A stretch of DNA of 63,047 bases, counting the filler, from Octopus bimaculoides (lineage: Eukaryota), in NCBI RefSeq assembly GCF_001194135.2. It is 8 parts of 7 records of this genome, joined end to end, with 100 filler letters (N's around TTAATTAATTAA, not from the genome) between each part and the next. Parts side by side here need not be neighbours in the genome. Positions count along the whole stretch, not along the records: positions 9,885 to 12,090 come from NC_068993.1; 7 more parts are not named here. One strand, written 5' to 3'. The notes beneath the pieces are model-generated. The model did no database searches and was not told the origin of the DNA. It was given only the letters and a program-made list of their open reading frames with translations. Of the stretch, positions 9,937 to 10,310 are shown one piece after another (position 1 is the first letter of the stretch; each line of letters opens with the position of its first letter). The translations under genes and the position numbers were made by a program.

Positions 9937-10310
9937 CTCAATGCTATCAGAGAATTCCGCAGCAGTTCGCATTGACATGAACTTCTTCAATTGGTGTCTG
10001 TCAAGGATGTTGACAAAAGCAAATTCCAGCAAGGCTGCGAAGACAAAGCAAAGACAAGCAGCCATCCAGACATCAATAGCTTTTATATACGATACCTTCG
10101 GTAGTGTAGTTATAGCTGATGTCTTTTGAGTTGTCATGGTTAACACTGTTAAGATTCCGAGTGAGATACGTGCTGGTACAGCATCTACGTTCAGCCAAAA
10201 CGAAACCCAAGAGATAACTACAATGAATATACTTGGAATGTAGATTTGAATCATGTAGTAGCCGAGGTTCCTTTTCATAGTGAATTTCAGTTCGAGACAC
10301 GAGACATTTC
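9937..10310 (-). CDS. Internal exon of an anion-selective Cys-loop ligand-gated ion channel (glycine receptor/GluCl-like): end of loop C, M1, M2, M3 and start of the M3-M4 loop
   Basis: Translation (G)NVSCLELKFTMKRNLGYYMIQIYIPSIFIVVISWVSFWLNVDAVPARISLGILTVLTMTTQKTSAITTLPKVSYIKAIDVWMAACLCFVFAALLEFAFVNILDRHQLKKFMSMRTAAEFSDSIE matches the GlyR/GluCl pattern (GYY..Q.YIPS, SWVSFW, PAR, LPKVSY.KAID.W, LLEFA.VN). Acceptor tcttttatAG at 10312-10311 (phase 1); donor GAG|GTAAGA at 9936 (phase 0). Confidence 0.93.

What the first reader, a model, noticed from the sequence alone, without database searches (positions are those of the whole stretch)
10303..10305. Loop-C aromatic replaced by valine in an anion-type Cys-loop channel
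Seen: the exon opens (G)-N-V-S-C (GTC codon). Known: the equivalent position is an agonist-cage aromatic in GlyR alpha1 (G-K-F207-T-C) and C. elegans GluCl alpha (G-I-Y200-S-C). Inference: this subunit may not bind a classical amino-acid transmitter on its principal face. It could be a structural subunit, be gated by another stimulus, or be an atypical sensory receptor, an anion-branch analogue of the divergent nAChR-derived chemotactile receptors of octopus. This is the strongest protein-level candidate for a new system here.
Basis: partly seen in the sequence, partly recalled or inferred. Interest (0 to 1): 0.7.

Follow-up and report, generated by a model that had tools for sequence, protein, structure and literature searches.

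The report
Octopus chloride-channel subunit with Phe-to-Val change
The valine is real: it sits in the exon of an already annotated Octopus bimaculoides glycine-receptor-like chloride-channel gene, is a species-specific change from phenylalanine that probably weakens one ligand-binding face, and is a curiosity within an uncharacterised receptor group, not a new system.

Summary
Observation confirmed. On the minus strand, window 10310-9937 is one exon (AG acceptor, GT donor). It encodes (G)NVSC, then M1, the PAR anion motif, M2 and M3. GTC (10305-10303) aligns without gaps to GlyR F207 and GluCl Y200.

The exon peptide matches three Octopus bimaculoides records ("glycine receptor subunit alpha-2", XP_052828367.1) at every residue. 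The gene is therefore annotated, though uncharacterised.

The Val is derived. O. sinensis, Argonauta hians (codon TTC) and two other cephalopod assemblies have Phe. About 96-98% of GlyR-like homologues have Phe, Tyr or His there.

O. bimaculoides also carries Ser-to-Ala at the loop-C hydroxyl position. The only three differences from O. sinensis in the mature extracellular and M1-M3 regions all lie in loop C.

The whole mollusc clade lacks the loop-D Arg and has Lys/Arg in place of the loop-E Ser. I found no characterised member.

Most likely this is a functional, strongly constrained chloride-channel subunit whose principal binding face is degraded in this one species. A sequencing error or polymorphism is not excluded. 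Nothing supports a sensory "new system". Interest is low to moderate.

The parts
9937..10310 (-). Single coding exon (374 nt; starts in phase 1, ends in phase 0). It encodes the end of loop C, strand beta-10, M1, the M1-M2 PAR motif, M2, M3 and the start of the M3-M4 loop.
   Evidence: Translation and sequence. Pfam PF02932 E 3e-33. GlyR alpha E 2e-46. Identical at every residue to O. bimaculoides XP_052828367.1.
10303..10305 (-). GTC = Val (Val230 of XP_052828367.1). This is the position of GlyR alpha-1 F207 and GluCl alpha Y200.
   Evidence: Orthologues read TTC (Argonauta) and TTT (two other cephalopod assemblies). O. sinensis has Phe.
10297..10299 (-). TGT = the second cysteine of the loop-C disulfide (GlyR C209 position).
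   Evidence: C in 208 of 219 aligned homologues.
10311..10321 (-). 3' splice site: pyrimidine tract ttcttttat followed by AG (10312-10311).
   Evidence: The same intron position and phase occur in Argonauta, L008 and L001.
9935..9936 (-). 5' splice site GT (GAG|gtaaga).
   Evidence: The orthologous exon end is at the same place in L001, L008 and L009.
10192..10260 (-). M1 helix (YYMIQIYIPSIFIVVISWVSFWL).
   Evidence: Gapless alignment to GlyR alpha M1.
10168..10176 (-). CCA GCA CGT = Pro-Ala-Arg, the anion-selectivity signature at -2' to 0'.
   Evidence: PAR is cited as the anion signature in PMC4801368.
10111..10176 (-). M2 pore helix (PARISLGILTVLTMTTQKTSAI). 9' is Leu; 6' is Leu instead of the usual Thr; 19' is Ile.
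   Evidence: The same M2 occurs across the clade.
10003..10083 (-). M3 helix (KAIDVWMAACLCFVFAALLEFAFVNIL).

Best explanation
The piece carries the loop-C-end/M1-M3 exon of the Octopus bimaculoides gene annotated 'glycine receptor subunit alpha-2'. The product is an anion-type (PAR) pentameric ligand-gated channel subunit. It belongs to a mollusc-wide clade with no characterised member that I could find.

Shown: Val230 is a derived, single-step change (TTC to GTC) in the O. bimaculoides lineage. It is accompanied by Ser227-to-Ala in the preceding exon. The rest of the mature extracellular domain and M1-M3 is identical to the O. sinensis orthologue. Non-synonymous divergence between cephalopods is very low.

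Inferred: the gene is functional. In this species the principal (+) face has lost two of its three loop-C agonist contacts: the hydroxyl and the aromatic that help cage the agonist's amine. That interface should therefore bind a small amino-acid-type agonist poorly or not at all. The subunit would then work as a low-sensitivity homomer or, more likely, as a non-binding or complementary partner in heteromers with paralogous subunits. The pore and gating machinery appear unchanged.

This is a species-level variant of an orphan receptor, not a new kind of system.
For: - **Identity:** the exon peptide is identical to XP_052828367.1, XP_014774438.1 and A0A0L8H8U8, all reading FDAGNVSC.
- **Orthologues have Phe:** O. 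sinensis XP_029643878.2 reads FDSGNFSC and is otherwise identical across the exon. Argonauta hians has TTC and the two other assemblies have TTT.
- **Constraint:** between cephalopods pN is 0.035-0.07 against pS 0.79-0.85 over 112 codons. F-to-V is the only residue in codons 1-109 that is unique to the window.
- **Clustering:** O. bimaculoides and O. sinensis differ at 18 alignment positions. Seven are in the signal peptide, four in the M3-M4 loop, one in M4, three at the C-terminal end and three in loop C. None lies elsewhere in the mature extracellular domain or M1-M3. The chance of three changes falling within 8 residues is about 0.001-0.003 if substitutions were uniformly distributed.
- **Residue mapping:** V230 aligns to F207, A227 to T204 and F225 to Y202.
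- **Functional precedent:** GlyR alpha-1 F207A gives no response and F207Y is functional (PMC6130964). F207A raises strychnine IC50 about 119,000-fold (PMC3066128). The loop-C aromatic and Thr are part of the amino-acid-agonist motif (PMC4338433).
- **Family:** Pfam ligand-binding and membrane domains are present. The closest solved structures are GlyR alpha (E 1e-105).
Against: - No raw reads or RNA could be examined. All three O. bimaculoides protein records probably derive from one underlying assembly (my recollection), so an error or a heterozygous allele is not excluded.
- Both O. bimaculoides loop-C changes would be T-to-G first-position changes. That could be coincidence or a systematic artefact.
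- Loop-C positions 202 and 204 already vary freely in this clade (for example V/A in L008, R/Q in Patella). The + face may never have been used canonically, in which case the Val could be nearly neutral.
- Val keeps hydrophobic bulk.
- No functional data exist for any clade member that I could find.
Confidence: 0.55

Rival explanations
1. The substitution is real but functionally near-neutral. In this clade the loop-C tip is not used for canonical agonist binding, so Phe-to-Val (and Ser-to-Ala) is simply tolerated, and the O. bimaculoides and O. sinensis receptors behave alike.
For: Within the 39 clade members, the T204 and Y202 positions are highly variable (G, S, A, D, Q, T, E, N and others). 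L008 has V and A at those positions. The clade lacks the loop-D Arg and loop-E Ser. Val is hydrophobic like Phe.
Against: The F207 position itself is Phe in 30 of 34 clade members with a residue there and aromatic in about 96-98% of all homologues. O. sinensis and Argonauta have a fully GlyR-like + face (Y/F loop A, E-S-F loop B, F-x-S-x-x-F loop C). Both derived O. bimaculoides changes hit contact positions, while nothing else in the mature extracellular domain changed.
Confidence: 0.27
2. The GTC is an assembly or sequencing error, or one allele of a heterozygous site in the sequenced animal.
For: It is one T-to-G change from the Argonauta codon TTC. All records with Val come from one species and probably one base assembly (the assembly history is my recollection). 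No independent reads were seen.
Against: A second, independent non-synonymous difference (Ser to Ala) lies three residues upstream, in a different exon of the same loop. Consensus errors in a finished assembly are rare. The window itself, given independently, carries GTC.
Confidence: 0.1
3. The receptor has acquired a new stimulus in O. bimaculoides, such as a new ligand, pH, or a sensory role analogous to the nAChR-derived chemotactile receptors.
For: The changes are clustered in loop C while everything else is conserved. The clade has no known ligand.
Against: There is no expression data. The subunit is GlyR-like with a PAR motif, not nAChR-like. Only two residues differ from congeners. The proton-gated Alv-a1-pHCl has a canonical site and is not in this clade.
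Confidence: 0.05
4. The gene is a decaying pseudogene.
For: Loss of two normally conserved binding residues.
Against: The frame is open and the AG/GT splice sites are intact. 123 of 124 exon residues are identical to O. sinensis. pN/pS is about 0.04-0.08. NCBI annotates it as a full-length 409-aa protein.
Confidence: 0.03

Closest known systems
Vertebrate glycine receptor alpha subunits (GLRA1-3)
   Same: They are the best matches among solved structures (E 1e-105; about 42% identity overall, about 62% over this exon). They share the PAR motif, the double Cys loop, the loop-A aromatics and loop-B E-S-F, and the M1-M3 sequence.
   Different: R65 is Thr, S129 is Lys, F63 is Leu, T204 is Ala and F207 is Val. 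Loop C is two residues longer. 6' is Leu and 19' is Ile. The M3-M4 loop is short. There is no evidence of gating by glycine.
Orthologues in O. sinensis (XP_029643878.2), Argonauta hians and two unnamed cephalopod assemblies (L001, L008)
   Same: The exon structure and splice phases are the same. Identity over the conserved part of the exon (first 112 codons) is about 91-93% for Argonauta, L008 and L001; O. sinensis matches at 123 of 124 exon residues. They form one clade in a neighbour-joining tree.
   Different: All have Phe where the window has Val. O. sinensis and Argonauta also keep Ser where O. bimaculoides has Ala.
Aplysia GluClAc1/2 and other lophotrochozoan glutamate-gated chloride channels
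   Same: They are molluscan GlyR-like anion channels with a nearly identical M2 (ARISLG[I/V]LTVLTMTTQ, 6' Leu).
   Different: They fall in a different clade in the tree. They have the loop-A Arg needed for glutamate recognition (PMC4338433), where the octopus protein has Pro. GluClAc2 keeps the loop-C Phe (PMC4178172).
Alvinella pompejana Alpo5/Alpo6 (glycine/GABA/taurine-gated) and Alv-a1-pHCl (proton-gated)
   Same: They are lophotrochozoan GlyR-like PAR channels (PMC4801368).
   Different: Alv-a1-pHCl and Alpo6 keep the canonical loop C (Y..T..F). Alv-a1-pHCl also keeps the loop-D Arg and loop-E Ser.
Non-agonist-binding 'structural' or complementary subunits of heteromeric receptors (e.g. 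nAChR beta subunits; from general knowledge)
   Same: They are subunits whose loop C lacks the agonist-caging aromatics and which contribute only the other face or none. This is the model proposed here by analogy.
   Different: They belong to the cationic branch. No heteromeric partner or assembly data exist for the octopus subunit.
Octopus chemotactile receptors
   Same: They are also cephalopod pentameric-channel relatives with a degraded orthosteric site.
   Different: They are nAChR-derived cation channels in an expanded, sucker-expressed family. This gene is a conserved orthologue in the anion branch, with a paralogue but no sign of lineage expansion, and only two derived residues.

Membership tests
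[quoted passage not shown] | Transmembrane region with M1-M3 (Pfam PF02932) | tested here: met
   Window exon: E 3e-33, 116 bits against a cut-off of 28.
[quoted passage not shown] | Extracellular ligand-binding domain with the 13-residue-spaced Cys loop, plus M4 | tested here: met
   These are not in the window. In the matching O. bimaculoides protein P0447, PF02931 scores E 1.6e-42 and the Cys loop reads CPMDLRRYPMDTQVC. An M4 exon is seen in the orthologous loci.
Anion-selective branch (GABA-A / GlyR / GluCl) | Pro-Ala-Arg at -2' to 0' before M2 | tested here: met
   CCA GCA CGT at 10176-10168.
Two-Cys-loop group (GlyR / GluCl type) | A second disulfide pair bracketing loop C | tested here: met
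   The second Cys is at 10299-10297. The first Cys is in the preceding exon of P0447 (YECDPTLQFDAGNVSC).
Agonist-binding glycine receptor alpha / amino-acid-agonist motif (PMC4338433) | Loop-C aromatic (GlyR F207) | tested here: not met
   Val in the window.
Agonist-binding glycine receptor alpha / amino-acid-agonist motif (PMC4338433) | Loop-C Thr/hydroxyl (GlyR T204) | tested here: not met
   Ala in O. bimaculoides; Ser in O. sinensis and Argonauta. The residue lies outside the window.
Agonist-binding glycine receptor alpha / amino-acid-agonist motif (PMC4338433) | Loop-D Arg (R65) and loop-E Ser (S129) on the complementary face | tested here: not met
   Thr and Lys in P0447. Thirty-eight clade-type proteins share this pattern.
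Agonist-binding glycine receptor alpha / amino-acid-agonist motif (PMC4338433) | Loop-A and loop-B aromatics (F99/F100, E157-S-F159) | tested here: met
   Y-F and E-S-F in P0447.
Agonist-binding glycine receptor alpha / amino-acid-agonist motif (PMC4338433) | Chloride current gated by glycine | not testable with these tools
   Needs heterologous expression.
Lophotrochozoan glutamate-gated chloride channels | Loop-A Arg that coordinates the glutamate alpha-carboxyl (PMC4338433) | tested here: not met
   P0447 reads LYFPNEK (Pro); Aplysia GluClAc2 reads VFRNEK.
Octopus chemotactile receptors | nAChR-derived cation channel, expanded family, sucker expression | tested here: not met
   The nearest relatives are GlyR alpha, the PAR motif is present, and cephalopod orthologues are conserved. 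Expression is not testable here.

The most novel reading that the evidence does not exclude
The two loop-C changes in O. bimaculoides (Ser to Ala, Phe to Val) mark a recent, selected shift in what this receptor senses or in how it assembles. They occur in an otherwise unchanged subunit of an orphan mollusc clade. That clade appears to have moved its carboxylate-binding positive charge from loop D (Arg lost) to loop E (Ser replaced by Lys/Arg). If so, the two octopus species would be a natural two-residue experiment on ligand specificity in an uncharacterised class of inhibitory receptors.
Probability: 0.12. Interest if true: 0.55.

Novelty: new member of a known kind. Interest (0 to 1): 0.3.

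Why it matters
- **Annotation:** the automatic name "glycine receptor alpha-2" is probably misleading. The protein fails four of the six positions of the amino-acid-agonist motif.
- **Natural experiment:** the orthologue pair O. bimaculoides (Ala/Val) and O. sinensis (Ser/Phe) differs at only two binding-loop residues. This gives a cheap test of whether loop C matters in this orphan clade.
- **Clade pattern:** the loop-D Arg is lost and a loop-E Lys/Arg gained in 38 proteins. This may be another case of a relocated ligand-binding charge, like the one described for glutamate-gated chloride channels.
- **Caveat:** none of this amounts to a new system.

Tried and rejected
- **Upstream exons in the piece:** tblastn and a profile search of the six-frame translation found only the one exon.
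- **First two homologue searches:** they missed the octopus proteins because the tool lists only proteins up to about 1.75 times the query length. A 400-aa chimeric query solved this.
- **DNA of the octopus genes:** not returned for O. sinensis or O. bimaculoides because the gene ranges (450 kb and 607 kb) are too long. The O. sinensis codon and a dN/dS for that pair could not be obtained.
- **Octopus receptor preprint (10.1101/2025.04.02.646353):** it reports only DopC1 and AChRB1 out of 41 channels expressed. Its stored alignment is truncated, and a search of it for peptides from this exon (and the squid-type variant) found nothing.
- **Juneja et al. 2014:** not held. The Alv-a1-pHCl sequence was read from the preprint's alignment instead.
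- **RNA editing:** rejected as a way to restore Phe, because GUC contains no adenosine.
- **Intron features:** ARAGORN and Rfam found nothing meaningful. Pfam found nothing for the interrupted plus-strand ORF.
- **Not run:** structure prediction, because sequence similarity to solved GlyRs is already decisive and the tool returns no coordinates.

Full report
**1. What is in the sequence**

The feature is on the minus strand. Reading 10400 to 9885 gives ttcttttatAG|GA AAT GTC TCG TGT CTC GAA CTG…, and the exon ends …GAT AGC ATT GAG|gtaaga.
- The exon spans 10310-9937 (374 nt). It starts with two bases that complete a split Gly codon and ends on a codon boundary.
- It has a consensus acceptor and donor and no stop or frameshift.
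- It encodes (G)NVSCLELKFTMKRNLGYYMIQIYIPSIFIVVISWVSFWLNVDAVPARISLGILTVLTMTTQKTSAITTLPKVSYIKAIDVWMAACLCFVFAALLEFAFVNILDRHQLKKFMSMRTAAEFSDSIE.
- In domain terms this is the end of loop C, strand beta-10, M1, the Pro-Ala-Arg anion signature, M2, M3 and the first residues of the M3-M4 loop.
- Pfam places the exon in the neurotransmitter-gated channel membrane region (E 3e-33).
- Against PDB sequences the best hits are GlyR alpha-2, alpha-3 and alpha-1 (E 2e-46 to 4e-44). GKFTC aligns to GNVSC without gaps.
- The GluCl chain 3rhw_A aligns query residue 3 to its residue 200.

**2. How unusual the valine is**

- In 164 homologous stretches from the first two searches, the position reads F 93, Y 58, H 9, V 3, L 1.
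- In 213 full-length GlyR-like proteins with a residue there, it reads F 152, Y 53, H 3, V 3, N 1, Q 1. Two of the three V are O. bimaculoides records.
- The few other Val-bearing fragments (GPVPC) are divergent proteins with a VAR motif instead of PAR.

**3. Whose gene it is**

The homologue search lists only proteins up to about 1.75 times the query length, so short queries returned only genomic ORF fragments.

A 400-aa chimeric query returned "glycine receptor subunit alpha-2-like [Octopus sinensis]" XP_029643878.2. Its 90% cluster also holds XP_052828367.1, XP_014774438.1 and A0A0L8H8U8 from Octopus bimaculoides.
- The three O. bimaculoides records read …YECDPTLQFDAGNVSCLELKF…. They match the window exon at every residue.
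- The O. sinensis protein reads …YECDPTMQFDSGNFSCLELKF…. It is otherwise identical across the exon.

The window is thus O. bimaculoides or something extremely close. The gene is already annotated by homology. I found no functional study of it. The systematic octopus receptor screen reports only a dopamine-gated cation channel and an acetylcholine-gated anion channel (10.1101/2025.04.02.646353).

**4. Direction and context of the change**

| Source | Codon or residue at the Val position |
|---|---|
| Window (O. bimaculoides) | GTC, Val |
| O. sinensis XP_029643878.2 | Phe (protein only) |
| Argonauta hians (L009) | TTC, Phe; same intron position (ttttatag\|GA AAT TTC TCT TGT) |
| Unnamed cephalopod assemblies L001 and L008 | TTT, Phe |

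- Val is therefore derived, by one T-to-G change from TTC.
- Over 112 codons, synonymous sites between these cephalopods are saturated (pS 0.79-0.85). pN is 0.035-0.07.
- F-to-V is the only residue in codons 1-109 that is unique to the window.
- O. bimaculoides and O. sinensis differ at 18 alignment positions: 7 in the signal peptide, 4 in the M3-M4 loop, 1 in M4, 3 at the C-terminal end and 3 in loop C (L/M223, A/S227, V/F230). Nothing else differs in the mature extracellular domain or M1-M3.
- With Argonauta as outgroup, S-to-A and F-to-V occurred on the O. bimaculoides branch.
- Three changes falling within 8 residues has a chance of about 0.001-0.003 if substitutions were uniform. Loop tips are intrinsically more variable, so this overstates the significance.

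**5. The binding site as a whole**

The HMMER alignment of the O. bimaculoides protein to human GlyR alpha-2 and a 219-sequence alignment give the following, in GlyR alpha-1 numbering (from the literature).

| Loop | GlyR residue(s) | O. bimaculoides |
|---|---|---|
| A | F99 / F100 | Y / F |
| B | E157-S-F159 | E-S-F (kept) |
| C | Y202 | F |
| C | T204 | A |
| C | F207 | V |
| D | F63 | L |
| D | R65 | T |
| E | S129 | K |

- Lynagh et al. define the amino-acid-agonist motif as three aromatics and one Thr from loops A-C, plus a loop-D Arg and a loop-E Ser (PMC4338433).
- O. bimaculoides fails four of these six positions. O. sinensis and Argonauta fail only the two on the complementary face.
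- The loop-D/loop-E pattern is a clade property. Of the 219 proteins, 119 have Arg and Ser, 38 have a non-Arg at loop D with Arg/Lys at loop E, and only one has both.
- Almost all named members are molluscs. A neighbour-joining tree places them, with the cephalopod orthologues and an O. sinensis paralogue, apart from vertebrate GlyRs and from Aplysia GluClAc2 (no bootstrap).
- In this clade the T204 and Y202 positions vary widely, but F207 is Phe in 30 of 34 members.
- Characterised lophotrochozoan relatives are canonical. Alv-a1-pHCl and Alpo6 keep the canonical loop-C residues, and Alv-a1-pHCl also keeps the loop-D Arg and loop-E Ser (functions from PMC4801368).
- Aplysia GluClAc2 has the loop-A Arg, which the octopus protein lacks (Pro).

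**6. Mechanism**

- **Shown.** This is a conserved, intact, anion-type channel subunit with a derived Val at the loop-C aromatic position and a derived Ala at the loop-C hydroxyl position.
- **From the literature.** In GlyR alpha-1, F207A abolishes the glycine response whereas F207Y is tolerated (PMC6130964, Table 1). F207A raises strychnine IC50 about 119,000-fold (PMC3066128). In GluCls the equivalent Tyr/Phe contacts the agonist amine (PMC4178172, PMC4338433).
- **Inferred.** The + face of the O. bimaculoides subunit can no longer form the canonical amine cage. The subunit is probably a low-sensitivity homomer or a non-binding or complementary partner in heteromers.
- **Main rival.** Loop C of this clade may not be used canonically, so the change would be tolerated.
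- **Other rivals.** An assembly error or heterozygous allele cannot be excluded without reads. The second nearby change in another exon argues against it, although both changes being T-to-G is worth noting. A pseudogene is unlikely given the constraint. A sensory or new-stimulus role has no support here.

**7. Comparison and verdict**

This subunit works like, and belongs to, the anion branch of the Cys-loop receptors. It is closest to GlyR alpha (E 1e-105).

It should not be filed as a bona fide glycine receptor or as a lophotrochozoan GluCl, because defining binding residues were tested and not met.

It is a new (uncharacterised) member of a known kind, carrying a species-specific binding-loop variant. 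Interest is low to moderate. The useful outcomes are a testable two-residue natural experiment and the clade-level loop-D/loop-E charge pattern.

Noticed in passing
window 11446-11776: A roughly 301-nt insertion (11461-11761) is flanked by a 15-nt direct repeat (ACGGACACAGATATG / ACAGACACAGATATG). Its minus strand shows a tRNA-like head with box-A/B-like motifs (about 11693-11752) and a (CAA)n tail, so it looks like a SINE. ARAGORN and Rfam do not recognise it.
   Followed up: partly
window 11247-11460 and 11777-11934 (+ strand): A plus-strand ORF is split by the SINE-like insertion. Rejoined, it reads …YFVYAAECTKYNLIYVGCTTEQLNNGHRYDIRHNY…, which looks to me like a GIY-YIG-type motif of a transposable element. 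Pfam gave no hit.
   Followed up: partly
window 10744-10986; 9885-9924; 12012-12090: The intron contains microsatellites: (AC)37, a (TCTA/TCTG)18 array and (AC)23. TA repeats lie at both ends of the piece, with a T/C-rich tract before the last one.
   Followed up: yes
window 10150-10152 (- strand) and 10111-10113: Pore position 6' is Leu instead of the near-universal Thr of GlyR/GABA-A/GluCl, and 19' is Ile instead of Arg. Both are shared by the whole mollusc clade, and 6' Leu also by Aplysia GluClAc2. This may affect picrotoxin sensitivity and conductance.
   Followed up: partly
related proteins (alignment of 219 GlyR-like sequences): Loop-D Arg (GlyR R65) and loop-E Ser (S129) co-vary. 119 proteins have Arg+Ser, 38 have non-Arg plus Arg/Lys, and only one has both. 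This suggests the carboxylate-binding charge moved between neighbouring strands in a mainly molluscan clade with no characterised member that I found.
   Followed up: partly
L008:7066-7075: The orthologous loop-F/loop-C exon in the unnamed cephalopod assembly appears to use a GC donor (CAG|GCAAGT). This is the only splice choice that keeps the reading phase.
   Followed up: no
O. bimaculoides and O. sinensis gene records: The annotated gene ranges are very large (about 607 kb and 450 kb) for a protein of about 410 aa. In Argonauta the last four exons fit in under 4 kb.
   Followed up: no
O. bimaculoides protein residues 227 and 230: Both derived loop-C changes (Ser to Ala, Phe to Val) would be T-to-G changes at first codon positions if the ancestral codons were TCN and TTC. 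This may be coincidence, mutational bias or a systematic artefact. The Ser/Ala codon lies outside the window.
   Followed up: no
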